A stretch of DNA of 64,000 nucleotides from Isurus oxyrinchus (lineage: Eukaryota), in assembly GCA_026770705.1 (NCBI GenBank), contig JANJGN010000052.1, positions 2,542,001 to 2,606,000 of the forward strand. Reading direction: 5' to 3'. Position numbers and translations under genes: made by a program. A model generated the notes under the pieces. The model had not been told where the DNA came from and made no database searches. It was given only the letters and a program-made list of their open reading frames with translations. Position 1 is the stretch's first letter; each line of letters starts with the position of its first letter. Below, piece by piece: positions 17,831 to 64,000 of the stretch.

Positions 17831-17998
17831 GTGAAAATGTCAGGGTGTCCAGCTGATCCTACTTGTTCTGTTCTTATATTCTTATACAGACACAGGGTTT
17901 ACTGACAGTGCACAGCAAAGTGCTGTTCACTCACTTTGTTCCAACTTCCTCATTTTGTCTCACAGTGACACATCAGCCCTTTCTAATTAAATACACAG

Positions 17999-18083
17999 AG
18001 GGAGCAGCACAGGAAGAGGTCATTCAGCCCAAGCAGAGCGTGTGGGCAGTTCATCCCCAGGCGAGCAGTCGGACAGGTCCTGG
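17999..18083 (+). other. 85-nt exon upstream of the gene B signal exon (probable 5'UTR exon), near-identical to the gene C cytoplasmic exon 61846-61930
   Basis: aaatacacag acceptor, tgg|gtaagt donor, no ATG; about 390 nt before the signal exon acceptor, as in gene C. Confidence 0.55.
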
Positions 18084-18515
18084 GTAAGTAACAGAACGAT
18101 TGGAATTCACTTCCACCACCAACACCGTCCTTTGTTGATGTTGTGACTTTATAAAGACATTTTCCAATGATCGATGCCTTTGAAAGATTTCTACTGATTA
18201 TTGAGATCTGGGTGTGAGGCTCAAGTCTGTTGTACAGAACATCTTTCTAGCTCAAGGGACATGAGCTTGGGGCATCCTGAGGTGGTGAAAGGTGCTATAG
18301 AAATGCAAGTCCTTCATTGTTTTTCTTTCTGAAAGCCTTGTAACTCTCTGCAGAGCACCTATCATCCCACAGAGAATCAAAGTAGTCTGTGAAGATATTG
18401 TCTAAAAGCAGTTCTGATCTCTCGAGAGCATTCGGACAAGAGGTGAAGTCTCATTAACTCCTTTCTCTTTCAGAACTTCAGAGTTAGAAGCTAAAGGAAT
18501 ATCTGGGAGCAGACA

Positions 18516-35900: not shown

Positions 35901-38673
35901 GCTGTCAGGTCTTCGTTTCCAATCTCCATACTTGACGACCTTTCTCTCGCTAACTGTCCTGAACAACCCTTTTAATCGCTGAACTTCTCATTCTTTAATT
36001 GATAAATATTATATATAAATGTTACATGGATTACTTTGAAATGCAACACTTCTATTCATAAATTGCTTAGAAATTACTAAACATTCAACAGACAATGAAG
36101 CAATAGCGAAGTGAGCTCACTGTTGAAATGTAGGAAACACAGGTACTGATTTGTGCACAGCAAGATCCCGCAATCCATCGTGTGATAATGACCTGATAGT
36201 CGACTATTTTAGTGAGGTTGGTTGTTACATGTGTAGAGACTACATACCCTTTAGGGAGGTAAGCATGTCTCAATGTGGATGTGACTCCAGTCTCATACAC
36301 CAGCATGGTTAACTCTTACCTGCCCTCTGAACTGCTCTCCCAGTTTGGGACAAACCAGTGGTTCAGGAACAAGACCCCCCACCACCATCTCAAAGGGAAA
36401 CTAGTGATGGACAATAAATGTCAGCATTGCCCGAGAATGAGTATTTAAACATTGAGTGAGTGTATCGCTTCTCGAGATACATCGGAGCATCATTGTAAAC
36501 CTGTAGTGCAGTAATTAATGGCTGTTTTTACAGGTAGAGACTCCAGTAAATGGACAGTAGGATTGTTCACGGCTGGGATCATGTTGAGTGTTTTCCTGGC
36601 TGGAATCTTCATCTTCATCTGTGTGAGAAAGTAAGTCTGAAGATTTAACTTGATTTTAATATAAACATTTGCTTCAATGTTCTTTCCTTAAGTCGGTGAT
36701 TGTTTCTCTTGGGATCAGCACCAGGTCCCTCTCTGTAAGTGATCCCTGTGTCCACTCTGATCCGGAGAGAACCTTTCATTGTCCTGTATCCAGTAAACAA
36801 TCACGAGACCCAGAGATTCCTCACTCTGCACGATTACTCCTGGATAAATATTTGCTTCAATGTTCTTTCCTGAAGTCGGTGATTGTTTCCCTTGTGTTAA
36901 GCGCCAGATGCCTCTCCGTAACTGGTCACTTTGTCCCTTATTATCCAGAGAGTGTTTTTCATTGCCCGTTATCCAGATGAATAATAATCAGTTGCTGTGA
37001 TCTGGAAGGTGCTGCCTGAAAGGGCGGTGGAAGCAGATTCAATAGGAACTTTCAAAAGGGGAATTGGATAAATACTTGAAGGGGGAAAATTTGAAGGGCT
37101 ACGGGGGGAAGAGCAGGGATGGAGGGGTCAGGCAAAATTGGATCACATGACACACTTCCATTATAGTGATATCACGCTGATATCCCTTATTGCAACTGGA
37201 GACAGTCCAGTCGTTGGTGTAAGGTTACAGTGGGCTCTGTGTCTGTGCTGCACTGACTCTCTGCTATATGATAACCACAGTGTGATATTGTGTTATTGCA
37301 GGAGAAAGACAGCGATGGAGGAGAGAGTTTTAGGGACCAGTGACATTGCATTGAGCCCCAGTCCACTCTCTGTGAAGCACCAGGTACAGGAGCTGTTTAC
37401 ACTCACTCCAAAGCTTCAATATCAGTGTGTAGACAACACGTGTCCCAGATTCCCAACCCAGTTACCCACAGATATCTACCTGTGGAGTCAGCAATGGCTC
37501 AGTAGGTAATACTGACTTTCGGTCCCTTCCCCCTCTCTCCCTCCATCACTCGCTCTTTGTCCAGAGACCTGAACACAATAATCACAAGGCACCTGATGTC
37601 ACTACTGAGGGAGTGCTGCACTGTCGGAGGGTAGGTACTGAGGGAGTGCTGCACTGTCAGAGTGTCAGTACTGAGGCAGTGCTGCACTGTCGGAGGGTCA
37701 TTACTGAGGGAGTGCTGCACTGTCGGAGGGTAGGTACTGAGGGAGTGCTGCACTGTCGGAGTGTCAGTACTGAGGCAGTGCTGCACTGTCGGAGGGTCAG
37801 TACTGATGGAGTGCTGCACTGTCGGAGGGTCAGTACTGAGGGAGTGCTGCACTGTCGGAGGGTAGGTACTGAGGGAGTGCTGCACTGTCGGAGGGTCACT
37901 ACTGAGGGAGTGCTGCACTGTCGGAGGGTAGGTACTGAGGGAGTGTTGCACTGTCGGAGTGTCAGTACTGAGGCAGTGCTGCACTGTCGGAGGGTCAGTA
38001 GTGAGGGAGTGCTGCACTGTGCGAGGGTCAGTACTGAGGGAGCGCTGCACTGTCAAATAGTCAATATTCAAGTGGTGCTGCCTTCTCGAAGAGGCAGTTG
38101 TGAGGGAGTGCCGCACTGTCAGAAGCCAGCACTGAGAGTACATTGTAGTGTTCAAGGTGCTGTCTTTCAGAACAGTTGTATAATGCTGACCATGTTTACC
38201 CTCTCAGGTGGTCGTATAAGATCCCACGGCCACATTTCCAACACTATAGCAGTGACACCCTTCAACAAAAATTTCTTCATTTGCGTGAGGTTCTTTGGAT
38301 GTCTTTGAAAAAAAGGGTTAAACGCTCTGAGCCACGACTGACACTAACGAGGCTGCACAATAATTTAACCCTATCAGTGCCAGTAAATGATGTGAGGATG
38401 TCTTCTGTTTCCATTTCTCTGTAGGGTAAACAGAACGTGCTGATTACTGAGCCCCGGAACACAACCAGAGACACAACTAGTGAGGGGGAGACCCCAGCTC
38501 CCCGGGGTCTCTCTGAAGGTCCAGTGGGAGGTGATGCTGGACATGGGAATCCTGACAAACCCGACGAGATTCTCTACGCCAACATCAACTTTTCAAAGCT
38601 GCCCAGCGGTGACAGGACTGTGCACAGGAGCGAGGACACAGAATACGCACAGATCAGGTTCCAGAAAAACTGA
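18516..38673 (+). CDS. Siglec-like gene B: inhibitory-type, V + C2 + 8 repeated C2, TM, ITIM + ITSM-like tail (about 1129 aa)
   Basis: join(18516-18555, 21981-22349, 24755-25051, 25599-25880, 26766-27047, 27822-28103, 28843-29124, 32509-32790, 33598-33879, 34662-34943, 35435-35716, 36534-36630, 37302-37383, 38425-38673) = 3390 nt, open, all GT-AG. Requires skipping 24015-24383. Confidence 0.85.
21981..22349 (+). CDS. Gene B Siglec V-set domain exon with the essential Arg (codon 22286-22288)
   Basis: SCVQIPC (two Cys), W in strand C, GDCSL Cys in strand E, and [10 protein letters not shown] with Arg in place of an F-strand Cys: the Siglec signature. Confidence 0.93.
22980..23955 (-). mobile_element. 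CR1 RT/3' fragment, interrupted by a short Penelope-derived piece (about 23745-23881)
   Basis: Minus strand reads as CR1 C-terminal remnants ([10 protein letters not shown]; [11 protein letters not shown]). 23745-23881 resembles the Penelope terminus at about 29650-29750. Confidence 0.7.
24015..24383 (+). pseudogene. Duplicated V-set exon with an in-frame TAG at 24311-24313
   Basis: Same length (369 nt) and splice sites as 21981-22349; TAT>TAG at the Tyr of YFFR; an extra Cys (YPSCLEN). Confidence 0.9.
24755..25051 (+). CDS. Gene B second Ig (Siglec linker C2) exon
   Basis: [39 protein letters not shown]; the extra Cys fits the Siglec V-C2 interdomain disulfide; phase 1-1. Confidence 0.9.
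25599..25880 (+). CDS. Gene B repeated C2 exon 1
   Basis: 282 nt, AG/GT, phase 1-1, open. Confidence 0.88.
26766..27047 (+). CDS. Gene B repeated C2 exon 2
   Basis: 282 nt, AG/GT, phase 1-1, open. Confidence 0.88.
27822..28103 (+). CDS. Gene B repeated C2 exon 3
   Basis: 282 nt, AG/GT, phase 1-1, open (YLC variant). Confidence 0.88.
28843..29124 (+). CDS. Gene B repeated C2 exon 4
   Basis: 282 nt, AG/GT, phase 1-1, open. Confidence 0.88.
29649..31973. mobile_element. Penelope-like retroelement insertion with an inverted duplication and a 13-bp TSD
   Basis: GIY-YIG domain [26 protein letters not shown] (31107-31436) and RT C-terminus [18 protein letters not shown] (30685-). 29649-30620 is the reverse complement of about 31000-31935. 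gtaattacagcgt at 29636-29648 and 31974-31986. Confidence 0.92.
31835..31873 (+). ncRNA. Minimal type I hammerhead-ribozyme-like motif of the Penelope element; mirror copy 29713-29751 (-), partial copy about 23843-23881 (-)
   Basis: agtt-CTGTCGA-a-gggtc(atgag)gactc-GAAAC-GTC-aact: stem I agtt/aact, stem II gggtc/gactc, palindromic ACGT. The core deviates from CUGAUGA here; the 23843 copy has CTGATGA. Confidence 0.6.
32509..32790 (+). CDS. Gene B repeated C2 exon 5
   Basis: 282 nt, AG/GT, phase 1-1, open. Confidence 0.88.
33598..33879 (+). CDS. Gene B repeated C2 exon 6
   Basis: 282 nt, AG/GT, phase 1-1, open. Confidence 0.88.
34662..34943 (+). CDS. Gene B repeated C2 exon 7
   Basis: 282 nt, AG/GT, phase 1-1, open. 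Confidence 0.88.
35435..35716 (+). CDS. Gene B repeated C2 exon 8
   Basis: 282 nt, AG/GT, phase 1-1, open. Confidence 0.88.
36534..36630 (+). CDS. Gene B transmembrane exon [33 protein letters not shown]
   Basis: 97 nt, phase 1-2, uncharged hydrophobic helix. Confidence 0.9.
37302..37383 (+). CDS. Gene B cytoplasmic exon 1
   Basis: 82 nt, phase 2-0, paralogous to 4839-4920. Confidence 0.82.
38425..38673 (+). CDS. Gene B terminal exon with ITIM ILYANI (38569-38586) and ITSM-like TEYAQI (38638-38655)
   Basis: Matches (I/V/L/S)xYxx(L/V/I) and TxYxxI, the arrangement seen in CD33-related Siglecs. Confidence 0.88.
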   Translation, partial: GKQNVLITEPRNTTRDTTSEGETPAPRGLSEGPVGGDAGHGNPDKPDEILYANINFSKLPSGDRTVHRSEDTEYAQIRFQKN

Positions 38674-49150: not shown

Positions 49151-50381
49151 CTAATATTGGACTAATCTCCAGGCGAGGTTGGCTGGATGGATTATTGACA
49201 AGGTCCATTCACCCTGTAAAGAGTTTCTCTGGTTTGAAATACCCGATCAAACATCAAGTTCTGTGTCTAAACTTTGTGTTGAAAAGACACCTTTCCAGCT
49301 CTTCACCTGCCATTAGGTTGTTGAGTCTTCACATGCTCCGTCTGTCCGTGGCCAACCCCTCTTATCTCATCCTTTCCTTGTGGTACATCGAGCTGTTCAT
49401 CCTGACGGGTTCCCTCCTTCCCAGTAACACTCCATCTCCAACATCAAACTAACTCCCAACACGTTGATGAATTGTATGGATTCCAGCGTCAGTTGGTTCT
49501 GTCTGAGGCTGTTTCTCTGATCGGGGACCGAGCTGTTCTGAACGGACATTGTGTTCAGCAGTTCTTATTGCAGATCAGACTGTTCAACCAATGCTGCTGT
49601 TCACTGAGGTGACTCCGATTCTACATTCACACATTAATGATCTCATGTCCAGCAGCAAACATCTGAATGAAGCCAGGTTCAAGAAAAAACCCAGCTGCTT
49701 GATCCGACAGTTATCTGTTCAGGCATGGCCCCTTGTTCCAAATAACAAACATTATTTAAAAATAGTCATCACATGAGCCTGGTTAACAAGGAAATGAAAC
49801 CATGAACAATTTGCAGTAAAGTGAAACGTACAGGACAATCTATTTATATAGAGCTGATGATTTATTTTACACGAGACATGTTGCTAATTTCAAACATCAT
49901 CCGAACTATGGCAGTTCTGACAGTGCAGCACTTCCTCAGTACTGACCCTCTGACAGTGCAGCACTCCCCCAGTACTGACCCACTGACAGTGCAGCACTCC
50001 CTTGGGACTGAATCCAGAGATACAAGGAAGAGACTGAAGAGCTGACGATTCAGCTGAATTTAAAAACAGAGGCAGTTACAGAATCACAACAAGTTTACAG
50101 AGCAGAAGGAGGCCATTCAGCCCCTCGAGCCTGTTACACAGGAACTGGAGCGGCCATTCAGCCCCCTCGAGCCTGTTACACAGGAACAGGAGGAGGCCCA
50201 TTCAGCCCCTCGAGACTGTTACACAGGAACAGGAAGAGGCAATTCAACCACATTCTTGACACCAAAGGGGTTACCAGTTTGCTTACGGTGGAAGACAGAG
50301 AGTTGGTTTCTCAAATTCACACAAACCAACTCACATTTTGACTCACAGAGACACATTCACCCTTTCTAATTAAATACACAG

Positions 50382-50466
50382 AGGGAGGAGCACAGGAAGA
50401 GGTCATTCAGCCCAAGCAGAGCGTGTGGGCAGTTCCTCCCCAGGCGAGCAGTCGGACAGGTCCTGG
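50382..50466 (+). other. 85-nt exon upstream of the gene C signal exon (probable 5'UTR exon)
   Basis: Paralog of 17999-18083 and 61846-61930 with AG and GTAAGT sites. Confidence 0.55.
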
Positions 50467-50899
50467 GTAAGTAACGGAACAATTGGAATTCACTTCCACC
50501 ACCAACACCGTCCTTTGTTGATGTTGTGACTTTATAAAGACAGATTCCAATGATTGATGCCTTTGAAAGATTTCTACTGTTTATTGAGATCTGGGTGTGA
50601 GGCTCAAGTCTGTTGTACAGAACATCTTTCTAGCTCAAGGGATGAGGAAAATGGGATGCCCTGAGCTGGTGAAAGGTGCTATAGAAATGCAAGCCCTTCA
50701 TTGTTTTTCATTCTTAAAGCCTTTTAACTCTCTGCAGAACACCTATCATCCCACAGGAAATCAAATTAGTCTTTGAAGTCATTGTCTAAAAGGAGTTCTG
50801 ATCTCTCGAGAGCTGTCGGACAAGAGGTGAGGTCTCATTAACTCCTTTCTCTTTCACAGTTTGAGAGTGAGAAGTGGATGGAATATCTGGGAGTGGACA

Positions 50900-50939
50900 A
50901 TGATCAGGAAATCTTACTTCCTCCTGTCACTTCTCCAAG
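50900..50939 (+). CDS. Gene C signal peptide exon [13 protein letters not shown](V)
   Basis: Paralog of 18516-18555; acceptor at 50859. Confidence 0.8.
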
Positions 50940-53900
50940 GTAATATCATCATCAGATTTAATGTTAATAGTCTCTGTCAAGGATCATTCTTATTGAGCTG
51001 TGATTGGGAACCGATTCAGCAGTGATCCAGTGTACAAACACACACCAAGTCCCATTCACCCATCACCCCTGTGCTCACTGATATACACTGACTCCCTGTG
51101 TGACAGCAGAATTGGAAGTGATCAGAGATCTCAGAGAGTTGTAGGGACTGGAGGACGTTACAAAGTTCAGCAGAATTGTAGCAGCGAGAGCAGGATCTTA
51201 AAATTCAGGTGCTGTCAGACGTTGGTCAGTGAGCGATGGGGAGTGATGGGTTGAGTAGAGAAGCAAAGATAAAAACTGGGGGATGAAGACTATCCTGCTG
51301 CGAGGTCTCCGATAGCAATGGCCTGAAATTTGTGTCCTTTGCTGCCTTTATTCAAAATTTCCCATGAAGACAACACAGCAGCTCCTAGAATAGACAGGCT
51401 GTTCAGTGTCACACTTCCTGTCCATTCTCACCATGCTAGATACTTCAATAAGGGAGCAAGATAACTGAAAGAGAGAAGGGAGGCAAAGCTGTCTGTGTGT
51501 AAAACTGTCAAATATTCTGAGTTATCATGAGTGTCTCTGATCTGCTGCAGAGTTTAAATTTCACAGAATCTGAGCACTTTGCAGCTCAGAGAGAGACCAT
51601 TGACTCACTGCCTGAAAGGCCGGTGGAAGCAGATTCAACAGGAACTTTCAGAAGGGGAACTGGATAAATACTTGAAGGGGAAATTTGCAGGGATGTGCGA
51701 AAGGTGCTGGAGAGGAATTGGGAAAGAGCCAGCACATGCACGATGGGTCAAATGAGCTCCTCCTGTGTTGTATCATTCAACAATCAGACAATTTAAGACC
51801 CTTGTCAGCAAAACTTCAGAATCCTGCTGAATCACAGATGTTTCAGAAGGACAGGGAACACGAGGTTTCTGGTATCAGCGTTTCATGTGGGGCCCTGCTC
51901 AGTTTGAACAAATAAACAACACCATCTTTGAAAGTCATGAACCCAACACAGGGGCACCTCCGACACATGCAGAGCTCAGGCTAGAGGCACTTTGTTAGTG
52001 TGTTTCACAGTGTCTGCTGGAGTAGGGTCAGTGCTGAGCTTGGGGACAAGTCAGTCTACAATGCTGCATCGGAATCAACAATACAACAATATGGGGTTTA
52101 GATCAGAAATAATCCATTAGACAATGAGGATCCAAAGAGATTCCTTAGACAATGAGGATCCAAAGAGATTCCTTAGACAATGAGGATCCAAAGAGATTCC
52201 TCAGACAATGAGGATCCAAAGAGATTCCTCAGACAATGAGGGTCCAAAGTGATTCCTTAGACAATGAAGATACAAAGTGCACCAATCAGATTGAACCAGA
52301 TTAGCTAATCAGCTGTGTTGAAGAGCAAACAGGAATGTTAGGCTAATTAGTGATTCATGACGGTGATAATGGGGGGAGTTCTGAGGGCTCCTAATCCATT
52401 GTCCTGTCTTGTAAATCAGCACTGAATGGATCTCAATGGGTGGGTCTCGTAGACACTGTGTTGGGTGGAAGACTGGCTTCACTAAGGGGAAGCGGCAGTA
52501 GAGAGGCATTGTCACTGGGCTAGTATTCCAGAGGCCCAGGGTGATGCTCTGGGGCCCTGGGTGTAAATCCCATCACAGCAGATGAATGGGATTAAAAAGC
52601 CTGGTTCACTGATCCCCTTCAGGGAAGGAAATCTCCACCCTTACCGAGTCTGGCCTACATGTCACTCCAAACCCACAGCAATACAATTGATTCTTAAATG
52701 CCTCTGATGGACATGGGATGGGTAATAAATGCTGGGCACATCCCATGAACGGATAATTTGAAAAACACATGACTTGGAGACACTGTGTTGGGTGGAAGAC
52801 TGGCTTCACTAAACAGGGTCCTGAGGACCATGAGCCAATGTAGAATGAACTTGTCCACTCCTGTGTCCAGGATTCTCTTCCATCCATTGTGAAACCTTGG
52901 GGAGATCCCTGTGTGTCCTGTAGATGGTCCACACTGCAGCCACTGTGCCCCAGTGATGGACGGGGTGGATATCGAGTCTAGTGGATCTACAAACCATCCA
53001 GAGTTAAATATTGATATTTCTCTCCCCAGTTGGACTGTCACAAGAGTGGAAAGGTGACACTCCACGAGAGGTGACAGCGCAGGAAGATTCGTGTGTACAG
53101 ATTCCATGTCATTACAGTTATCCATCACATTTGGAAAGCCAACCACGAGTCGGAGTCTGGTTTAATAATGAGAATCAGATTCCTGGATCTCCCATTGCCT
53201 TTCACTCCAAGGATCACAGTCACGAGTTACCACGGTTCCACCATCGGACCCGGCTGTCTGGAGACCTGAAAGATGGCGACTGTTCCCTGATTATAAACAA
53301 CATCAGACGGGAAGATGCAGGACCTTATTTTTTCAGGATAGAATTTGACAGCAGTAATAGTTACAACTACTATCCTGTAACCCAGCTTCACGTTTCTGGT
53401 AAGTGCTGTGTTATAATTACTCAACAATTCACATCCAACACTCAATGGGAATTAACACAAACTGTGACGTTTACATATTAACACAAAACACAGCTTATTA
53501 TAACACACTGTCTGATTCTCAATAACCTGCTGATAGCTTCCAGTTCAGTCCTAAAGCAACCTCTAATACTCACTTTAATATCAATGATTAAATGTATTGA
53601 CTGTGTCCATCAAAGTTATCAGGTTATCCACTCTCATCGATCTCTCTAATCCTGTTTAAAATAATTTCCTGATCATTGTAACCTCTCAGTTCTGATATCA
53701 TCCTTGCAAAGGTGCTTTCTCTTGTGGGACTGTGATTTCTATTTGAACTGATGCTTCACGTTATATTTCTCTAAAAGGATCCATTCTCCGTCTGTTAGAT
53801 TTCACAGATAAACCCACGATATTCCCTGCTGAAATTATTGCAGGAAAGCCTGTGGATGTAAGCTGCACCTTCAACACAACGTGCAATGGAACAGCAGCAC

Positions 53901-56900
53901 CTGTCTTAACCTGGGACACTCCCACTGACGTACCTGGATCAGTCTCAAACACTGTAACTCAGCATGGTGTCACTCTGACCTATACTTCTGTTCTGACCCT
54001 GATCCCATCACTCAAACACCACGGACACAGTCTCAGCTGCAGAGTGAGATATCCATCTGTTTCATCGAAGCAGTCCCTCGTACTAATTGTACAAGGTAAG
54101 TATGGACATCCTTCATTATACATTCGCTGGAACAGTCTATATTGTGCACAGCAGGATCTCATAGAAAGGTATTCTGATGAGAACCAGATCATCTGTAGTT
54201 TAGGGAAAAACACTAACCAGAAAACAGTTAATGACAGTTTCTGAACATTAACACTGGAGCTTTTTTTTCCAGCCAAGAAGCTGATAGAGCAGAGCATCAT
54301 TCACAATATACTAACCCCCTGACAGTGCAGCACTCCCTCAGTACTGACCGCCTGACAGTGCAGCACTCCCTCAGTACTGACCGCCTGACAGTGCAGCACT
54401 CCCTCAGTACTGACCCTCCAACAGTGCAGAACTCCCTCAGCACTGACCCTCTGACAGTGTAGCGCTCCCTCAGTACTGACCCTCTGACAGTGCAGCACTC
54501 CCTCAGTACTGACCTGCTGAAATTGCAGCTCTCCCTCAGTACTGACCCTCTGACATTGCAGCACTCCCTCAGTACTGACCCTCTGACAGTGCAGCACTGC
54601 CTCAGTACTGACCCTCCAATAATGAAACAATCCCTCAGTACTGACTCTCCGACAGTGCAGCACTCCTTCACTGCTGACCCTCCAACTCTGCAGTGCTCCG
54701 TCAGGACTGAAAATCTAACATTTCATATCTCCCTCCTGACTGACCATCTGAAAATACAACAGATCCTCGGTCGAGTCCTTCAAACAGTGCTGCACTTCCA
54801 CAGTACAGAATCTCCCCCCCACCCACAGTGCAGCACTTCCACAGTACTGAACCTCTGACAGTGCAGCACTCCCTCAGTACTGACCCTCCCACCTGCAGCA
54901 CTCCCTCAGTACTGACCCTCCCACATGCAGCATTCCCTCAGTACTGACCCTCCCACATGCAGCACTCACTCAGTACTGACCCTCCCACAGTGCAGCACTC
55001 TCTCAGTACTGACCCTCCCACATGCAGCACTCACTCAGTACTGACCCTCCCACAGTGCAGCACTCCCTCAGTACTGACCCTCCCACATGCAGCACTCCCT
55101 CAGTACTCACCCTCCCACAGTGCAGCACTCCCTCAGTACTGACCCTCCCACATGCTGCACTCCCTCAGTACTGACCCTCCCACAGTGCAGCACTCCCTCA
55201 GTACTGACCCTCCCACATGCAGCACTCCCTCAGTACTGACCCTTTGACAGTGCTGCACTACCTCACTATTGGCTTTAAACTAAATAGAGTGTGGGGCGAA
55301 TGTTTCTGGAGAGGGTATATGTACAGTTACAAACCAAAAGGATTTATTAGCATTGCAGGATAGCTGTTTTGGCAATGATACCCAGTGTGTGACAGGAAGG
55401 GACACAGTGTCCAAACATAAAAATACATCAGCAAATAGTGTCAGAGTGGGGGAAATGATAAAAAGACAAAATTAATGGCTCTTTACTTAAATGCACATAG
55501 TATTTGGAATGTTGGCCTTTATTTCAAAGGGAATGGAGTATAAAAATAGGGAAGCCTTGCTAAAACTATACAAGGCACTAGTTAGACCACACCTAGAATA
55601 CTGTGAGCAGTTTTGGTTCCCTTATCTAAGGAAAGATGTACTGGCATTGGAGGCAGTCCCGAGAAGGTTCACTAGGTTGATCCCAGTAATGAGGGATTTT
55701 CATATGAGGAGAGGTTGAGTAGGATGGGCCTGTACTCATTGGAGTTTAGGAGAATGAGAGCTGACCTTATTGAAACATATAAGATTCTTAGGGTGCTTGA
55801 CAGGGTAGATGCTGAGAGGTTGTTTCCCCTTGTGGGAGAGTCTAGGACCAGAGGGCATAATCTCAGAGTAAGGGGTCACCCATTTAAGACAGAGATGAGG
55901 AGTTTCTTCTCTCAGAGGGTAGTGAATGTGTGGAATTCTTTACTGCAGAGAGCTGCAGAGGCTGGGTCATTAATTATATTCAAGGCTGAGATACACAGTT
56001 TTTTAATCAGTCAGGGAATCAAAGGCTATGGGGAAGAGGCAGGAAAGTGGAGTTGAGGATTGTCAGATCAGCCATGGTGTCATTGAATGGCGGAGTTGAT
56101 TGGCCGAATTGCCTCCTTCTGCTCTGACGTGTTGTGGTCTTATGGTCTTATCACCCTCCAACAGTGCAGAGCTCCCTAATTACTGATCCTCCGACAATGC
56201 AGCACTCCCTCAGTACTGAACCTCTGACAGTGCAGAGCTCCCTAATTACTGACCCTCCGACAATGCAGCACTCTTCCAGTGCTGACCCTCCGACAGTGCA
56301 GCATTCCCTAAGTACTGATCCTCCAACAGTGCAGCACTGCCTCAATACTGAGCCTCCAACAGTGCAGCACTGCCTCAATACTGACCCTCCAACAGTGCAG
56401 CACTCCCTCAGTGCTGACCCTCCGACAGTGCAGCACTCCCTCAGTACTGACCCTCCGATAGTGCAGCACTCCCTCACTACTGACCCTCCGTCAGAGCAGA
56501 GCTCCTAATTACTGACCCTCCAACAGTGCAGCACTCCCTCAGTACTGACCCTCCAACAGTGCAGAACTCCCTAATTACTGACCCTCTGATAGTGCAGAGC
56601 TCCCTCAGTACTGACCCTCCAACAGTGCAGCACTCCCTCAGTACTGACCCTCCAACAGTGCAGAGCTCCCTAATTACTGACCCACCGACAGTGCAGCACT
56701 CCCTCAGTACTGACCCTCTGACAGTGCAGTACTCTTTCAGTTCTGACCCTCCGACAGTGCAGCACTCCCTCAATACTGACCCTCCAACAGTGCAGCACTC
56801 CCTCAGTGCTGACCCTCTGACAGTGCAGAGCTCCCTCAGTACTGACCCTCCGATAGTGCAGCACTCCCTCAGTACTGACCTTCCGACAGTGCAGCAGTCC

Positions 56901-59900
56901 CTCACTACTGACCCTCTGACCGTGCAGCACTCCCTAAATACTGACACTCTGACAGTGCAGCACTCCCTCAGTACTGACCCTCCGACAGTGCAGTACTCTT
57001 TCAGTTCTGACCATCCAACAGTGCAGCACTCCCTCAGTACTGACCCTCCCACAGTGCAGCACTCCCTCAGTACTGACCCTCCAACAGTGCAGAGCTCCCT
57101 AATTACTGACCCTCCGACAGTGCAGCACCCTCTCAGTACTGACCCTCCGACAGTGCAGCACACCCTCAGTACTGAACCTCCGACAGTGCAGAGCTCACTA
57201 AATACTGACCCTCCCACAGTGCAACACTCCCTCAGTACTGATCCTCCGACAGTGCAACACTCCCTCAGTACTGTTCCACCGACACTGCAGCACTCCCTCA
57301 GTACTGATCCTCCGACAGTGCAGCACCCTCTCAGTACTGTCCCACCGACAGTGCAGCTCTCCCTCAATACTGACCCTCCGACAGTGCACCACTCCATCAG
57401 TACTGAACCTTCAACAGTGCAGCACTCCCTCAGTACTGACCTTCCGACAGTGCAGCAGTCCCTCACTACTGACCCTCTGACCGTGCAGCACTCCCTAAAT
57501 ACTGACACTCTGACAGTGCAGCACTCCCTCAGTACTGACCCTCCGACAGTGCAGTACTCTTTCAGTTCTGACCATCCAACAGTGCAGAGCTCCCTAATTA
57601 CTGACCCTCCGACAGTGCAGCACTCCCTCAGTACTGACCCTCTGACAGTGCAGCACTCCCTCAGTACTGACCCTCCCACAGTGCAGCACTCCCTCAGTAC
57701 TGACCCTCCAACAGTGCAGAGCTCCCTAATTACTGACCCTCCGACAGTGCAGCACCCTCTCAGTACTGACCCTCCGACAGTGCAGCACACCCTCAGTACT
57801 GAACCTCCGACAGTGCAGAGCTCACTAAATACTGACCCTCCCACAGTGCAACACTCCCTCAGTACTGATCCTCCGACAGTGCAACACTCCCTCAGTACTG
57901 TTCCACCGACACTGCAGCACTCCCTCAGTACTGATCCTCCGACAGTTCAACACTCCCTCAGTACTGTCCCACCGACAGTGCAGCTCTCCCTCAATACTGA
58001 CCCTCCGACAGTGCACCACTCCATCAGTACTGAACCTTCAACAGTGCAGCACTCCCTCAGTACTGATCCTCCAACAGTGCAGCACTCCATCAGTACTGAT
58101 TCTCCGACAGTGAAGTACTCGCTCAGTACTGACTATGTGGCAGTGAAGCTTTTACAGTACCCACCCACCATCAGTACAGCAGGTCCTCAGTACTCACCCT
58201 CCAACAGGGCAGCACTCCCTCACTACTGACCCTCCGTCAGAGCAGAGCTCCTAATTACTGACCCTCCGACAGTGCACCACTCCATCAGTACTGAACCTTC
58301 AACAGTGCAGCACTCCCTCAGTACTGACCTTCCGACAGTGCAGCAGTCCCTCACTACTGACCCTCTGACCGTGCAGCACTCCCTAAATACTGACACTCTG
58401 ACAGTGCAGCACTCCCTCAGTACTGAACTGAAGAGTCTGCCTGAATTATGTGCTCTGTGGTGAAGGATTGATATCACACCTTTAACATTGTCAGGGTCTC
58501 TGAAAGTGCTTCACAGTCAATTTAAGTAACTGATCTTTATTTGTTTTCAGACGCACCACAGAATCTCTCAATTACTTCTCTTGATATGATTAACGCTTCA
58601 TCGATCAATATAATTGAGGGGAATTCTGCAGTGATAATCTGCTCTGTCGAGAGCTTCCCAGCTTCTAACCTGACGTGGCGACATCTTAATGTCCCAATGA
58701 ACAGAACAAGTTCCAACAATGAGCTGTGGTTGGTGATTCCTCACGTTACATCCAGGGACACTGGAGACTATCAGTGTGTGGCAGAGAATGAACATGGAGC
58801 AGTGGAGGGGTTCATAACCATCACTGTGGAACGTGAGTTAACACAAATTGCAATAACACTGTCACATACAGATGCACACACACACACATAGACATACACA
58901 TGCACACACACTCACTCATGAACAGATGTATACAAACAGGCACACGCACACATGCGCAAACACATACACACACACACGCACACACAAACATACTCACATG
59001 TGCAGAAACACGAACACACACACAAATACACACACACAGACACACACACACACACATGTGTAAGGTTCACTCTAGTCTCTCAGGGCTGCACTGGAGTCTC
59101 GGTATCAGCCCTGATTCTGTGTTGAAGGAAGGTAAACTCCAGATCAACAAGACCCTGAATTGGATGAGCAAGCTCCTGAACAGTGAATTTTATATTTACC
59201 CCTCAGTGCTCCATCAATCAAATACAATTCATTGCCTGTCAAGCCCTTGGCGAATTCCTGAAGATGTGAATGGAACTTTCTTTCATTCTAGATTGACAGC
59301 ACCTCAACTGGTGGGAGAATGCAACTGCAGTGTGACAGTTTACATAGGCAGTGTCCATTATAAATGTGACAGAGGAACTTATTCTGAGGAAAGGTGCCTG
59401 GAAATGCATTCAGACATCAGATTCAAAGAGATGATACATGGAGTCTTGCTGTGCACTGCGCTTGCTCACTCTAAAATCTTTATATGTTTATAGACACACC
59501 ACAGAATCTCTCAATTACTTCTCTTGATATGATTAACACTTCATCAATCAATATAATTGAGGGGAATTCTGCAGTGATAATCTGCTCTGTCGAGAGCTTC
59601 CCAGCTTCTAACCTGACGTGGCGACATCTTAATGTCCCAATGAACAGAACAAGTTCCAACAATGAGCTGTGGTTGGTGATTCCTCACGTTACATCCAGGG
59701 ACACTGGAGACTATCAGTGTGTGGCAGAGAATGAACATGGAGCAGTGGACGGGTTCATAACCATCACTGTGGAACGTGAGTTACACAGAATTCAACATTC
59801 TGTTTTTATTAGCTCATGGGATGTGGGCATTGTTGACAAGACCAGAAATCATTGCCCATCTGTAACTGCCCCTTGAGAAGGTGGTGGTGAGCTGCCTTCT

Positions 59901-62900
59901 TTAACCACTGCAGTCCATGTGGTGTAGGCGCACCCACAGTGCTGTTAGGGAGGGAGTTCCAGGATTTTGACCCAGCGACGGTGAAGGAACGGCCGATATA
60001 GTTCCAAGTCCCAGGGCAGACCACCACCTCAAGTTCACCTCCAAGTCAAACCCCTCACTGACTTGGAACTGTCTTGGTGGAAGAGGTTAAGTGTTTGGAA
60101 GGTGCTGTCGAAGGAGCCTTGGTGAGTTGCTGCAGCGCATCTTGTAGATGGTGCACACACTGCTGCCATTGTGTGCCAGTGGTGGAGGGTATGAATGTTT
60201 ATGCTGGTGGATTGGCTGTCGATCAAACAAGCTGCTCCTGGATGGTGTCGAGGTTCTTGAGTGTTGTTGGAGCTGCACTTATCCAGCCAAGTGGAGATTA
60301 TTCCATCACACTCCTGACTTGTGCCTTGTCCGATGGTGGACAGGCTTTGGGGAGTCAGGAGGTGAGTTACTCACCGCAGAGTTCCCAGCCTCTGACCCGC
60401 ATTTGTAGCCACATTATTTCCTGTTGCCGGGCTGTTGCCAGGGCCAATAGCCTTTGCTGTATCCAGTATCATCAGCTGATTCCTGATGTCACGTGGAGTC
60501 AATCGAATTGTCTGAAAGCTGACATCTGTGATGCTGGGACCCTCTGGAGGAGGCCGAGATGGATCATCCACTCAGCACTTCTGGCTGAACATGGTTGCCA
60601 ATGCTTCAGCCTTGTCATTTGCACTGATGTGCTGAGCTTCCCCATCATTAAGGATGGGGATATTTGTGGAACATCCTCCTCCTGTTAGATCTTTAATTGT
60701 CCATCACCATTCATGACTGGATGTGGCAGGACTGCAGAGCTTAGATCTGACCCGTTGGTTGTGGGATCGCTTTGCTCTGTCTATAGCATGTTGTTTCCGC
60801 TGTTTGGTGTGTATGTAGTCCTGTGTGTCACCTCAGCAGCTTGGCACCTCTGTTATATGTGAATCCTCCTTATAGAAACCTGCATGTACATGGATATTAT
60901 CAATAAATATTACATAGATAAATGTTATTTATACAGAGCTTTCATGCATAGACAATATCACTTCACAAGTTCAGAATTACTACATGTACATAGAGAACCA
61001 TTCTCAAACTGTACTGGAGTCATTCATTGGCTGATTTTACAGGGCGAGATTCCAATGAATGGAAAGCAGGATTGCTTGGAGCTGGAATCTGTTTGAGTGT
61101 TGGACTGAGTGGATTCTTCATCTTCAAGTGTGTGAGAAAGTAAGTGTGAAGCTTTAATTGGTTGTTTTTGAACATGTTTTCTTCAACCTTCTCTCCTTAT
61201 AGAAAGAACTTGCATTTCTATAACACCTTTCACAACCCAAAACCCTTCACAACCCCTGAAGAGCTTTGATGTTCACCTACTGTTTAACATCTCATCCAAC
61301 ACTCACTGTTTCACAACTCAGTCCTGTAACAGGCAGTGTTGACCTGGACCATAAAATACCTTGTGACTTCCTGAGGATGTGAAAGGGGATATATAAATGA
61401 AGACATTTCTTTTGTTAGTGAATGCAATCTCTTTCCATTTTCAGTGTCTAACTCACTCTCTCTCTTACCTCCACTAATGCTCTCCTTCTCATTCTCTCTC
61501 TCATTCACTCTCTCCCCAATCTCCACTAATGCTCTCCTTCTCATTCTTTCTCTCGTCCTCTTACACATTGTTCAGTATCTCACAATTTTAAGGAGCGCTG
61601 AGCAACGTCTGCTCCATCAGAAGATCGACCTCAACACCTGGAGCGAGCAGTGAATTGAAACTCGCTCAACGACTGTTCAGATTTACACAGGAATCACGAC
61701 ACAGAGTCAGGACACAAAGGGTTAACAGTTTGCTTACAACACAACACTAAGGCCTTACGTTTCAGTGAAAGGGTTTTCACAATTGTTCCCCAATTCCTGA
61801 TTTGACTCACAGAGACACATCAACCCTTTCTCATTAAATACACAGAGGGAGCAGCACAGGAAGAGGTCATTCAGCCCAGTCAGAGCGTGTGGGCAGTTCC
61901 TCCCCAGGCGAGCAGTCGGACAGGTACTGGGTAAGTAACGGAACGATTGGTACTCACTTCCACCACCAACACCGTCCTTTGTTGATGTTGTGACTTTATA
62001 AAGACAGATTCCAATGATTGATGCCTTTGAAAGATTTCTACTGATTATTGAGATCTGGGTGTGAGGCTCAGGTCTGTTGTACAGAACATCTTTCCTGGTA
62101 AATTATGCAGACAGGTTACACACAGTCTACGATTATATTCCCTCAGGTCTAGAAGATTAAGGAGTGATCTAATTGAGGGATTCAAAATGATTAAACACTC
62201 GAAAGGGTCGATAGAGAGAAGCTATTCCCTCGGGTGGGGGTGGGTGGTGGGGGTCGGGTGGAGTCCAGAACAAGGGGGCCGGAACTTCAGATTGGAGCCA
62301 GGCCATTCAGGGGTGATTTCAGGAAGCACTTCTTCACACAAAGGGGAGTGGAAATCTGGAACTCTCTCCTCAATAATCAAACCCAACACCGAATACACAT
62401 CATGTTGATTGTCACTCTGTCCATTTCCATCTCTATTACAGAAGAGAGGTGAGGGGAAAGCAGGAATCAAATCGAACCACCGTGTTGATGAATATCGAGG
62501 TCCTGTTTATGAAAACTGTGAGCGTGGTTGGGCTTTGAGGAATCAGGTGAGTCACACACCACAGGATCCCCAGCCTCTCAGCTGCTCCAGTAGCCTGGTT
62601 ATTGATATGGCTGCTCCAGTCCTGTATCTGCAATGTTTTATACAGTCACTCCCAAACCCAACCAAACTCACACCCAACACCATTCAGAATCAATAATCAA
62701 ACCCCGATCAGAATCAATAATCAAACCCCGTTCAGAATCAATAATCAAACCCCGTTCAGAATCAATAATCAAACCCCGTTCAGTATCAATAATCAAACCC
62801 CGTTCAGTATCAATAATCAAACCCCGTTCAGAATCAATAATCAAACACCGTTCAGAATCAATAATCAAACCCCGTTCAGAATCAATAATCAAACCCCGTT

Positions 62901-63656
62901 CAGTATCAATAATCAAACCCCGTTCAGAATCAATAATCAAACCCCGTTCAGTATCAATAATCAAACCCCGTTCAGAATCAATAATCAAACCCCGTTCAGT
63001 ATCAATAATCAAACCCCGTTCAGAATCAATAATCAAACCCCGTTCAGTTTCACTAATCAAACCCCGTTCTGTATCAATAATCCAACCCCGTTCAGAATCA
63101 ATAATCAAAACCCATTCAGTTTCAATAATCAAACCCCGTTCAGTATCAATAATCAAACCCCTTTCAGAATCAATTATCAAACCCTGTTCAGTGTAAATAA
63201 TCAAACCCCTTCCAGTATCAATAATCAAACCCCGTTCAGAATCAATTATCAAACCCCATTCAGAATGAATAATCAAACCCCGTTCAGAATCAATTATCAA
63301 AACCTGTTCAGAATCAATAATCAAACTCCGTTCAGAATCAATAATCAAACCCCGTTCAGAATCAATAATCAAACTCCGTTCAGTATCAATAATCAAACCC
63401 CGTTCAGTATCAATAATCAAACCCTGTTCAGTATCAATAATTAATGTATCTATTGTGGGTGGAATTTTTGATTTGGATCAATAATACTAAACACTGATCA
63501 CTCTGATTGTCACTCTGATCATTTCTGTTTCTATTACAGAAGAAAGATGAGAAGGATCTGGAAATGAAATCTCACCGCGGAGTCAATCCTGATACAGATG
63601 ATGATCTTTACGCAAACTGTGAATTTGCTGAGGATTCTGTTTATGGGAATTTATAA
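50900..63656 (+). CDS. Siglec-like gene C: V + 3 C2, Gly-rich TM, ITAM-like/YxN cytoplasmic tail (about 557 aa), putative activating receptor
   Basis: join(50900-50939, 53030-53398, 53799-54095, 58551-58832, 59494-59775, 61043-61139, 61846-61930, 62442-62546, 63540-63656) = 1674 nt, open, all GT-AG with compatible phases. Confidence 0.8.
52117..52275. repeat. 28-bp tandem repeat (tagacaatgaggatccaaagagattcct), 5-6 copies; 2 copies at the paralogous site about 19745-19801
   Basis: Read directly from the sequence. Confidence 0.9.
53030..53398 (+). CDS. Gene C Siglec V-set exon, essential Arg retained
   Basis: SCVQIPC, GDCSL, YFFRIE; 13 amino-acid differences from the gene B V domain by manual alignment. 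Confidence 0.93.
53799..54095 (+). CDS. Gene C linker C2 exon
   Basis: 297 nt, phase 1-1, paralog of 24755-25051. Confidence 0.9.
54315..55262. repeat. 33-bp (and 31-bp variant) SINE-derived satellite array
   Basis: Unit actgaccctccgacagtgcagcactccctcagt. Confidence 0.92.
55263..56150 (+). mobile_element. CR1 LINE piece (5' fragment fused to the 3' end) embedded in the satellite
   Basis: [22 protein letters not shown]..; ends in tggtcttatggtctt. Confidence 0.88.
56151..58430. repeat. 33-bp satellite array with a 627-bp (19-unit) higher-order duplication; smaller arrays at about 2900-3090, 5960-6210, 9050-9300, 11945-12160, 25170-25470, 37600-38140, 46150-46445, 47560-47825 and 49915-50005
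   Basis: 11-aa periodic ORFs; near-identical ORFs at 57198 and 57825, offset 627. Confidence 0.95.
58551..58832 (+). CDS. Gene C repeated C2 exon 1
   Basis: 282 nt, phase 1-1, near-identical to the gene B repeats. Confidence 0.9.
59494..59775 (+). CDS. Gene C repeated C2 exon 2
   Basis: 282 nt, phase 1-1. Confidence 0.9.
59810..60850 (-). mobile_element. LINE fragments (same family as 4245-4700)
   Basis: Minus ORFs [16 protein letters not shown].. and [22 protein letters not shown]. Confidence 0.8.
61043..61139 (+). CDS. Gene C transmembrane exon [33 protein letters not shown]
   Basis: ttttacag acceptor, aa|gtaagt donor; same 97-nt length and phase as the A and B TM exons but diverged in sequence. 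Confidence 0.85.
61846..61930 (+). CDS. Gene C cytoplasmic exon 1 ([29 protein letters not shown])
   Basis: 85 nt, phase 2-0, open; exactly bridges the phase-2 TM exon and the phase-0 YENC exon. Confidence 0.7.
62100..62370 (+). mobile_element. CR1 3' fragment
   Basis: [14 protein letters not shown]..; [16 protein letters not shown]. Confidence 0.8.
62442..62546 (+). CDS. Gene C cytoplasmic exon 2 ([35 protein letters not shown])
   Basis: ctctattacag acceptor, cag|gtgagt donor, 105 nt, phase 0-0. Confidence 0.78.
62684..63441. repeat. 24-bp minisatellite (agaatcaataatcaaaccccgttc), about 31 copies
   Basis: Read directly; gives 8-aa periodic ORFs. Confidence 0.95.
63540..63656 (+). CDS. Gene C terminal exon [38 protein letters not shown]
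   Basis: tttctattacag acceptor, phase 0, TAA at 63654-63656; two Tyr motifs 7 aa apart with acidic residues upstream. Confidence 0.78.
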   Translation, partial: KKDEKDLEMKSHRGVNPDTDDDLYANCEFAEDSVYGNL

Positions 63657-64000
63657 ACTGAGCAAGAATGAGACACACACAGTGTGGGGAGAATACAGAA
63701 TGGGAGAATCATTCAAAACTCCAATTTACCTTCCTAATATCCACAGGAACTCACTCCCAGGAAATAGATTTAAACCTCTTGTTACAATCTGATGGAATTT
63801 CTTCGGAATGATCTATCCAGGATGATTGTCTGTGGGCTTCAATTCGAACATCCTCCTTCAGAATTGTCCCTCACTGTTGGAAAAATCCTTCTCTCCAATC
63901 TGATTGTAAATGTCTTTAGATATCGTTCGATGATGTACCAGGACAGAACGGACAAATTCAATCCCGTGTCCTTGATTATGAGTTAATTTTCATTCTGTTA

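What the first reader, a model, noticed from the sequence alone, without database searches (positions are those of the whole stretch)
61846..63656. A Siglec with an intrinsic ITAM-like, triple-YxN cytoplasmic tail
Seen: three phase-compatible exons give a ~100-aa tail with PVYENC, then [19 protein letters not shown] at the C-terminus (Yxxx-x7-YxxL, acidic upstream). It has no evident similarity to the A/B tails, and the last exon's frame is missing from the ORF track. Known: ITAM is YxxL/I-x6-8-YxxL/I, pYxN binds Grb2-family SH2 domains, known activating Siglecs lack such tails and use DAP12, and CEACAM3 is a precedent for an intrinsic ITAM-like decoy. Inference: a self-contained activating, possibly phagocytic, Siglec. 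Caveats: the first half-site has Cys at +3, and SVYGNL also fits a loose ITIM.
Basis: partly seen in the sequence, partly recalled or inferred. Interest (0 to 1): 0.88.

Follow-up and report, generated by a model that had tools for sequence, protein, structure and literature searches.

The report
Shark Siglec tail with YxN tyrosines
The three exons are the real end of a shark Siglec-type immune receptor gene and encode a tyrosine tail kept across shark orders, but it looks like a docking site for Grb2-type adaptors rather than a true ITAM, and in the closest-matching RNA sample the first exon is skipped, giving a short tail without tyrosines.

Summary
After TM exon 61043-61139 come three exons with canonical AG/GT sites: t1 61846-61930, t2 62442-62546 and t3 63540-63656. 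Together they give a tail of about 100 aa with YENC, YANC and a terminal YGNL.

RNA contigs show joints TM>t1, t2>t3 and a 3'UTR. A t1>t2 joint was not among the rows shown.

RefSeq models from other sharks carry the same tail. Stegostoma has TM-t1-t2-t3, Mustelus t1+t2 and Carcharodon t1+t3. A Scyliorhinus protein ends in the same module.

Across 7 modules Tyr and Cys at +3 are invariant and Asn at +2 is present in 6. The spacing of 7 and the terminal YxN[LVI]-stop are kept in all four t3-type modules.

The invariant Cys, the single-exon layout and the missing L/I fail the ITAM definition. The ITIM fit of SVYGNL is not conserved (A, P, A at -2).

The best reading is a third, Grb2-type (pYxN) docking tail whose signalling sign is unknown.

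In the RNA sample most like the window, TM splices straight to t2. This shifts the frame to a 32-aa tail without tyrosines. So t1, an 85-nt copy of the family's leader exon, works like a CEACAM1-type long/short switch.

The scan noted this same tail on other pieces of this genome (unchecked).

The parts
50382..50466 (+). 5' leader exon of gene C; near-identical copy of t1
   Evidence: 95.9% identical to 61801-62094 and aligned. Two RefSeq read-through models splice this exon type to the signal exon (P0005, P0006).
50860..50939 (+). Signal-peptide exon of gene C (ATG at 50900)
   Evidence: Sequence read, boundaries. It matches the N-termini of P0006, P0007 and P0009.
53030..53398 (+). V-set (sialic-acid-binding type) exon
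   Evidence: Pfam V-set 1.7e-12 and Ig_CD22 6.5e-09. Contains the CVQIPC and FFRIE motifs. Boundaries.
53799..54095 (+). C2-set exon (C2a)
   Evidence: Pfam C2-set_2 2.2e-08. Boundaries.
58551..58832 (+). Stalk Ig exon C2b
   Evidence: Pfam Ig_3 and I-set. Joint 58832>61043 in X5 and X6.
59494..59775 (+). Stalk Ig exon C2b' (skipped in the X5/X6 contigs)
   Evidence: Pfam Ig_3. Joint 59775>61043 in X1.
61043..61139 (+). Transmembrane exon; no charged residue inside the span; ends with 2 nt of a codon
   Evidence: 100% identical in protein to P0005, and 83-97% identical to P0006-P0010.
61783..62094 (+). 312-bp segment that holds t1; recent copy of the start of the family's duplication unit
   Evidence: 93.6% identical to 17936-18247 and 95.9% to 50337-50630. 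Its 5' edge is the same as that of the gene B/C units. Exon and intron parts are equally similar.
61846..61930 (+). t1: 85-nt cytoplasmic cassette exon that sets the frame for t2 and t3
   Evidence: Joint 61139>61846 in X5 and X6. A t1-type peptide follows the TM in six RefSeq models. It is skipped in X1 and X2.
62442..62546 (+). t2: first YxNC module (PVYENC)
   Evidence: Joints 61139>62442 and 62546>63540. Homologous to t2 of P0010 and P0009. It is an exon duplicate of t3: the acceptor flanks are 85% identical and BLASTP gives E=0.009.
62676..63441 (.). 24-bp tandem repeat, 32 copies, in the t2-t3 intron
   Evidence: TRF.
63540..63656 (+). t3: last coding exon, with LYANC, seven residues, then YGNL-stop
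   Evidence: Joint 62546>63540 in X2 and X5, plus loose ends in X1. 51% identical to the C-terminus of P0004, with the stop at the same place.
63657..64000 (+). 3'UTR, which runs beyond the window
   Evidence: Contigs cover 63536-63897 and continue (X5 record 23, X6 record 31, X1 record 8, X2 record 16).

Best explanation
These are the true terminal exons of the third Siglec-like gene in the window. They encode a tail type that sharks have kept for a long time. It consists of a serine-rich linker exon (t1) followed by one or two copies of a module built around Tyr-x-Asn-Cys, and the last copy ends in Tyr-x-Asn-[Leu/Val/Ile]-stop. Inferred mechanism: after the receptor is clustered on its sialylated ligand, Src-family kinases phosphorylate these tyrosines. 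The pYxN sites then dock Grb2-family adaptors (Grb2, Gads, Grap). This output differs from the ITIM/ITSM tails of genes A and B, and from the tailless, charged-membrane receptors that borrow an ITAM chain. Whether the net effect is stimulatory or dampening cannot be read from the sequence. Shown: t1 is 85 nt long (3n+1) and is a near-identical copy of the family's 5' leader exon. Including it puts t2 and t3 in the tyrosine frame. Skipping it gives a 32-aa tail without tyrosines whose stop lies 8 nt before the last exon junction, so by the usual 50-55-nt rule that mRNA should escape nonsense-mediated decay. The gene can therefore make a long signalling form and a short silent form, as CEACAM1 does with its 53-nt exon 7.
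For: The gene model rests on canonical splice sites and an open frame. RNA joints TM>t1 appear in two studies (X5, X6), t2>t3 in X2 and X5 with loose ends in X1, and the 3'UTR is covered. Conservation: P0010 (Stegostoma) carries TM-t1-t2-t3, P0009 (Mustelus) t1+t2, P0007 (Carcharodon) t1+t3, and P0004 (Scyliorhinus torazame) a t3-type end. In the alignment of 7 modules only Tyr and Cys(+3) are invariant, and Asn(+2) is present in 6 of 7. The terminal tyrosine is YxN[LVI]-stop in 4 of 4. Overall tail identity to Stegostoma is low (about 35-53% per exon by local alignment) against 71% for C2a and 83% for TM. That pattern fits a disordered tail kept for short motifs. The TM has no buried charge. 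pYxN is the known Grb2 SH2 motif and is used in CD22 and IpLITR 1.1b. The switch: joint 61139>62442 in X1 (depth 1856, against 2229 for C2b'>TM) and in X2, with the frame and stop position computed. CEACAM1 exon 7 is the precedent (PMC2490704).
Against: No binding was tested, and Grb2 docking is inferred from motif conservation alone. The invariant Cys at +3 is not explained by Grb2 specificity and may point to another partner or to a lipid or redox modification. One relative (P0007) has YKSC, without Asn. A direct t1>t2 joint was not among the 15 joints displayed (36 were hidden), so the full long form rests on orthologue models plus the TM>t1 and t2>t3 joints. All contigs over 61879-61880 in X1, X2 and X5 carry the leader-type letters, so paralogues blur the t1 evidence. 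In the sample closest to the window the skipped form dominates. The RefSeq proteins are automatic models.
Confidence: 0.55

Rival explanations
1. One reading: the YANC-x7-YGNL pair is a variant ITAM. When doubly phosphorylated it recruits a Syk-family kinase through its tandem SH2 domains, making an adaptor-independent activating or phagocytic Siglec, like CEACAM3.
For: There are acidic residues before the first Tyr. The spacing of 7 and a hydrophobic +3 at the last Tyr are kept in four species. The TM has no charge, so no borrowed ITAM chain is expected. CEACAM3 and marsupial CEACAMs show that single-chain ITAM or ITAM-like receptors exist, and some of them also have YxN (PMC2832619).
Against: The first half-site has Cys at +3 in 7 of 7 modules instead of L/I. 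The motif is also present alone in t2-type modules, with no second tyrosine. Both tyrosines lie in one exon, unlike the split ITAM layout. Asn at +2, which is irrelevant to an ITAM, is kept. Two relatives have Val at the last +3.
Confidence: 0.13
2. Inhibitory tail. SVYGNL would act as an ITIM recruiting SHP-1/2, or the pYxN sites would assemble a CD22-like Grb2-Shc-SHIP complex, so gene C would be another brake.
For: SVYGNL fits (I/L/V/S)xYxx(L/V) (definition). The CD22 tail uses a Grb2 site for inhibition independently of its ITIMs (PMC5302901). The TM is 61-65% identical in protein to the TM of the ITIM-bearing genes A and B.
Against: The -2 residue of the last Tyr is A, P and A in the three relatives, so the ITIM fit is specific to this copy. 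The family already has a dedicated ITIM/ITSM tail (A/B exon), and keeping a separate tail type suggests a different output.
Confidence: 0.15
3. Sorting signal. The terminal YxxPhi-stop, and perhaps the YxNC sites, would bind clathrin adaptors without phosphorylation and make the receptor endocytic, with no kinase signalling.
For: The last four residues are Yxx[LVI] followed at once by the stop in 4 of 4 species. Yxx(L/M/V/I/F) is treated as an endocytic motif in the CEACAM literature.
Against: This does not explain the conserved Asn at +2, the invariant Cys, or the t2 modules that lack a YxxPhi.
Confidence: 0.07
4. At this particular locus the long tail is not made in useful amounts. The t1 copy would be a recent piece of the next duplication unit, the normal mRNA would be TM>t2>t3, and the protein would be a short-tailed, signal-dead receptor or decoy. 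The YxN frame would matter only in paralogues.
For: X1 and X2 match the window at 99.6-100% in 4 contigs. They join TM directly to t2, at a depth close to that of the C2b'>TM joint. The 312-bp segment is 94-96% identical to the leader copies in exon and intron alike, and shares their 5' edge. This copy has private changes.
Against: TM>t1 joints exist in the sister species in two studies. t1 after this TM type is conserved in six RefSeq models from distant sharks. Contigs drop rare variants and 36 joints were not shown. The t2 and t3 tyrosine frames are intact here.
Confidence: 0.1

Closest known systems
CD22 (Siglec-2) cytoplasmic tail (and Siglec-10/G, from general knowledge)
   Same: A Siglec whose own tail carries a Grb2-type site next to other tyrosines. 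The V-set exon here hits the Pfam Ig_CD22 model. Grb2 recruitment to CD22 is documented (PMC5302901).
   Different: CD22 has three conserved ITIMs and signals as a brake. The shark tail has no conserved ITIM. It is built from duplicated YxNC exons and has no significant sequence similarity to ITIM-type tails.
CEACAM3 and other single-chain ITAM / ITAM-like receptors
   Same: An Ig receptor paired with inhibitory relatives that carries its own tyrosine pair at ITAM spacing. Some CEACAMs also carry YxN (PMC2832619).
   Different: Here +3 of the first Tyr is an invariant Cys, and the pair is not split by an intron. There is no sequence similarity, and Syk use is untested.
Channel catfish IpLITR 1.1b
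   Same: A fish Ig-type receptor whose tail has a YxN site proposed to bind Grb2. It drives ERK/Akt activation and phagocytosis without a classical ITAM (PMC4810170).
   Different: IpLITR 1.1b also has ITIMs and an ITSM. It belongs to a different receptor family and lacks the YxNC module.
DAP10, the immunoglobulin tail tyrosine (ITT) motif, and LAT/NTAL (general knowledge, not tested here)
   Same: Signalling through pYxN and Grb2-family adaptors rather than through an ITAM, with several YxN sites in a row as in LAT/NTAL.
   Different: Those are adaptor chains or antibody tails, with Met or Val at +3. None has the conserved Cys or a lectin ectodomain.
CEACAM1-L / CEACAM1-S switch
   Same: Including a short exon whose length is not a multiple of three (53 nt there, 85 nt here) selects a long tyrosine-bearing tail. 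Skipping it selects a short tail through a frame shift (PMC2490704).
   Different: The long CEACAM1 tail is ITIM/ITSM-type. Here the cassette exon is also used, in near-identical copies, as the 5' leader of neighbouring genes.

Membership tests
Siglec (I-type lectin) | N-terminal V-set domain of Siglec/CD22 type | tested here: met
   Pfam V-set 1.7e-12 and Ig_CD22 6.5e-09, both above the curated cut-off.
Siglec (I-type lectin) | Conserved arginine of the sialic-acid site and the CxxxPC pattern | tested here: met
   FFRIE and CVQIPC are present in the V-set exon translation. The same motifs occur in P0006-P0011.
Siglec (I-type lectin) | Binds sialylated glycans | not testable with these tools
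   Needs glycan-binding assays.
ITAM | First half-site (D/E)xxYxx(L/I) | tested here: not met
   The site is DDDLYANC. Cys at +3 is invariant in 7 of 7 modules. Definition from PMC2832619.
ITAM | 6-8 residues, then a second Yxx(L/I) | tested here: met
   Seven residues then YGNL. The spacing is kept in 4 of 4 species, but two relatives end in Val.
ITAM | Half-sites split between exons by a phase-0 intron | tested here: not met
   Both tyrosines lie within exon 63540-63656.
ITAM | Recruits Syk/ZAP-70 tandem SH2 domains | not testable with these tools
   Needs biochemical tests.
ITIM | (I/L/V/S)xYxx(L/V) present | tested here: met
   SVYGNL sits at the C-terminus.
ITIM | Motif kept in relatives | tested here: not met
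   The -2 residue is A (Stegostoma), P (Carcharodon) and A (S. torazame).
Grb2-type SH2 docking site (pYxN) | Asn at +2 of the tyrosine | tested here: met
   Three of 3 motif tyrosines here have it. Six of 7 module tyrosines and 4 of 4 terminal tyrosines across species have it.
Grb2-type SH2 docking site (pYxN) | Phosphorylation-dependent binding of Grb2/Gads | not testable with these tools
   Needs peptide pull-down or SH2 array.
Adaptor-coupled activating receptor (DAP12/FcR-gamma type) | Lys/Arg inside the membrane span and a very short tail | tested here: not met
   The span [20 protein letters not shown] has no charge, and Lys lies only at its outer edge. The tail is about 100 aa.

The most novel reading that the evidence does not exclude
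The YxNC-x7-YxN[LVI] end is a shark-specific, cysteine-variant ITAM that recruits Syk-family kinases directly. Sharks would then own an adaptor-independent activating or phagocytic Siglec, switched on and off by inclusion of an 85-nt exon that doubles as the leader of neighbouring genes.
Probability: 0.12. Interest if true: 0.8.

Novelty: new variant of a known kind. Interest (0 to 1): 0.52.

Why it matters
Siglecs are thought to signal in two ways: through ITIM-type tails, or by borrowing an ITAM chain through a charged membrane residue. Here a third tail is conserved across at least three shark orders. It is built from duplicated Tyr-x-Asn-Cys exons and has no conserved ITIM. That suggests early jawed vertebrates gave this lectin family a further, Grb2-type output. 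The invariant cysteine defines a short motif with no known reader, which can be tested directly with peptides. The 85-nt exon that both sets the tail's frame and serves as a 5' leader elsewhere shows how tandem duplication can reuse one exon for two jobs. I found no paper on this family in the library searched. The proteins exist only as automatic RefSeq models named CD33-like, Siglec-13 or MAG-like.

Tried and rejected
- phmmer of the t3 exon against 1.84 billion representatives gave one true hit (P0004) and three repeat-driven bacterial false hits.
- The search for homologous proteins with the P0004 tail found only P0004 itself. A profile of P0004 plus the separate exon translations added only P0005.
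- The Atlas search with the Stegostoma tail gave nothing usable (best score 0.76).
- The 61593-61653 alternative terminal exon had no joint among those shown. The contigs over it are unspliced and 6% different.
- An alternative t1 donor at 61923 breaks the frame.
- Homology of t3 to the A/B tail gave no BLASTP alignment and only a marginal NPD..LYAN match. It was left open.
- A search for the intermediate exon of genes A and B (their tail exon is also out of phase with the TM exon) gave no clear candidate.
- The joined exon model was translated only inside local scripts.
- Complex prediction was not used, because no partner sequence was available and phosphotyrosine cannot be modelled.
Full report
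**What is in the sequence**

The window holds three tandem Siglec-like genes. For the third gene (C) the exons are:
- leader 50382-50466
- signal exon 50860-50939
- V-set exon 53030-53398
- C2 exon 53799-54095
- stalk Ig exons 58551-58832 and 59494-59775
- transmembrane exon 61043-61139

The V-set exon passes the Pfam V-set and Ig_CD22 models and has the CVQIPC and FFRIE signatures.

All have canonical splice sites.

The TM exon ends two bases into a codon. t1 supplies one base plus 28 codons, and t2 and t3 are in phase 0. The order TM-t1-t2-t3 is therefore open to the stop at 63654-63656. The tail has about 100 residues, with PVYENC in t2 and LYANC, seven residues, then YGNL-stop in t3. No other open 3n+1 exon with a strong donor exists between TM and t2. 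No N runs lie in this region, and none were touched.

**Internal anatomy**

t2 and t3 are duplicates of one exon. Their acceptor flanks are 85% identical (62406-62453 against 63504-63551), and the peptides align with E=0.009.

t1 sits in a 312-bp segment (61783-62094) that is 94-96% identical to 17936-18247 and 50337-50630. Those two copies are the 5' leader exons of genes B and C. At gene C the next exon, 50860-50939, carries the ATG and the signal peptide that runs into the V-set exon.

The duplication unit shared by genes B and C starts at 17941/50326. That is the same 5' edge as the tail copy, whose similarity stops at 62094. A SINE-like piece follows the tail copy, and a 24-bp repeat of 32 copies lies in the t2-t3 intron.

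**RNA evidence (contigs only, one call allowed)**

Runs X1 and X2 (organism A) match the window at 99.6-100% over four contigs. Runs X5 and X6 (organism B) differ by about 3%, and DNA runs of organism B hold about 0.40 of the words. I infer that A is the window's species or nearly so, and that B is a sister species.

Joints seen:
- 58832>61043 and 61139>61846 (TM>t1) in X5 and X6, from two studies
- 59775>61043 in X1
- 61139>62442 (TM>t2, t1 skipped) in X1 and X2
- 62546>63540 (t2>t3) in X2 and X5, with matching loose ends in X1

3'UTR contigs run past 63897. A t1>t2 joint was not among the 15 rows shown (36 were hidden). All contigs over 61879-61880 in X1, X2 and X5 carry the leader-type letters, so abundant leader copies blur the t1 evidence.

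In X1 the TM>t2 joint (depth 1856) is nearly as deep as C2b'>TM (depth 2229). In that sample the skipped form therefore dominates. Skipping t1 shifts the frame and gives a 32-residue tail without tyrosines. Its stop lies 8 nt before the t2/t3 junction, too close for nonsense-mediated decay by the usual 50-55-nt rule.

**Relatives**

The t3 exon alone found P0004, a Scyliorhinus torazame protein (GCB77003.1). Its C-terminus aligns over 37 residues at 51% identity and stops at the same place.

Searching with the TM+t1 part of a Carcharodon model (P0005) found RefSeq models in five more species:
- Stegostoma tigrinum P0010 has TM-t1-t2-t3 in full.
- Mustelus asterias P0009 has t1 plus a t2-type module.
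- Carcharodon P0007 has t1 plus a t3-type module.
- Cetorhinus P0006 and Carcharodon P0005 run from t1 into the leader and signal exon of the next gene (read-through models). This also shows that the t1-type exon is spliced to the signal exon.

So t1 is an old cytoplasmic exon of this TM type, not an accident of this locus. The three-exon tail predates the split of lamniform, carcharhiniform and orectolobiform sharks.

**What is conserved**

In the alignment of seven modules only the tyrosine and the cysteine three residues later are invariant. Asn at +2 is present in six of seven. The four t3-type modules all keep seven residues between the two motifs and end in YxN[L/V/I] followed at once by the stop.

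Identity to Stegostoma is 71% in C2a and 83% in TM, but only about 35-53% in the tail exons by local alignment. That is the pattern of a disordered tail kept for short motifs.

**Interpretation**

Measured against published definitions (PMC2832619), the pair fails the ITAM test on the first +3 residue and on the split-exon layout. It passes on spacing.

SVYGNL fits an ITIM here, but the -2 residue is A, P and A in the relatives. The membrane span has no buried charge.

The feature that selection has kept is YxN, the Grb2-type SH2 motif. This motif is used by CD22 for an ITIM-independent brake (PMC5302901). It is also proposed for stimulatory, phagocytic signalling by catfish IpLITR 1.1b (PMC4810170).

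I therefore read the tail as a third, Grb2-family docking output of the shark Siglec family, with its signalling sign unknown. The invariant Cys is unexplained. The t1 cassette works like CEACAM1 exon 7 (PMC2490704).

**Novelty**

Literature searches found no description of this family or tail.

Notes of this scan report the same YxNC tail at other places in this genome. I could not read those places, so they are leads only.

**Limits**

- The joined exon model was translated only in local scripts and was not sent to any search tool.

Noticed in passing
window 17936-18247 and 50337-50630: Near-identical copies of the t1 exon serve as 5' leader exons of genes B and C. They lie at the very start of the tandem duplication unit. 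Read-through RefSeq models in Carcharodon and Cetorhinus splice TM>t1-type exon>signal exon of the next gene.
   Followed up: partly
window 6357-6602, 9418-9663, 12301-12546, 38425-38670: The A/B-type tail exon (LYAN., then TEYAQI) starts in phase 0, while the TM exons end two bases into a codon. Genes A and B must therefore also use an unidentified 3n+1 exon between TM and tail. A conserved 306-bp block (4736-5041, 7667-7972, 10746-11051, 37199-37504) is a place to look.
   Followed up: partly
window 62676-63441: A 24-bp tandem repeat of 32 copies at 91% match fills most of the t2-t3 intron. It accounts for about 28% of the words used to find sequencing runs.
   Followed up: no
window 61925: This t1 copy has a private C-to-A change that turns the Ser of DRSW (found in the other eight t1-type sequences compared) into Tyr (DRYW). 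The same change strengthens a GT seven bases upstream of the real donor.
   Followed up: no
window 54300-58510 and 37597-38136: Long arrays of a 33-bp-type satellite lie in the introns of genes B and C. Both strands are open as long repetitive ORFs of up to 581 aa, which are not genes.
   Followed up: no
window 58832>61043 versus 59775>61043: RNA contigs show the TM exon joined to either of the two stalk Ig exons, so the number of stalk domains varies between transcripts or paralogues.
   Followed up: no
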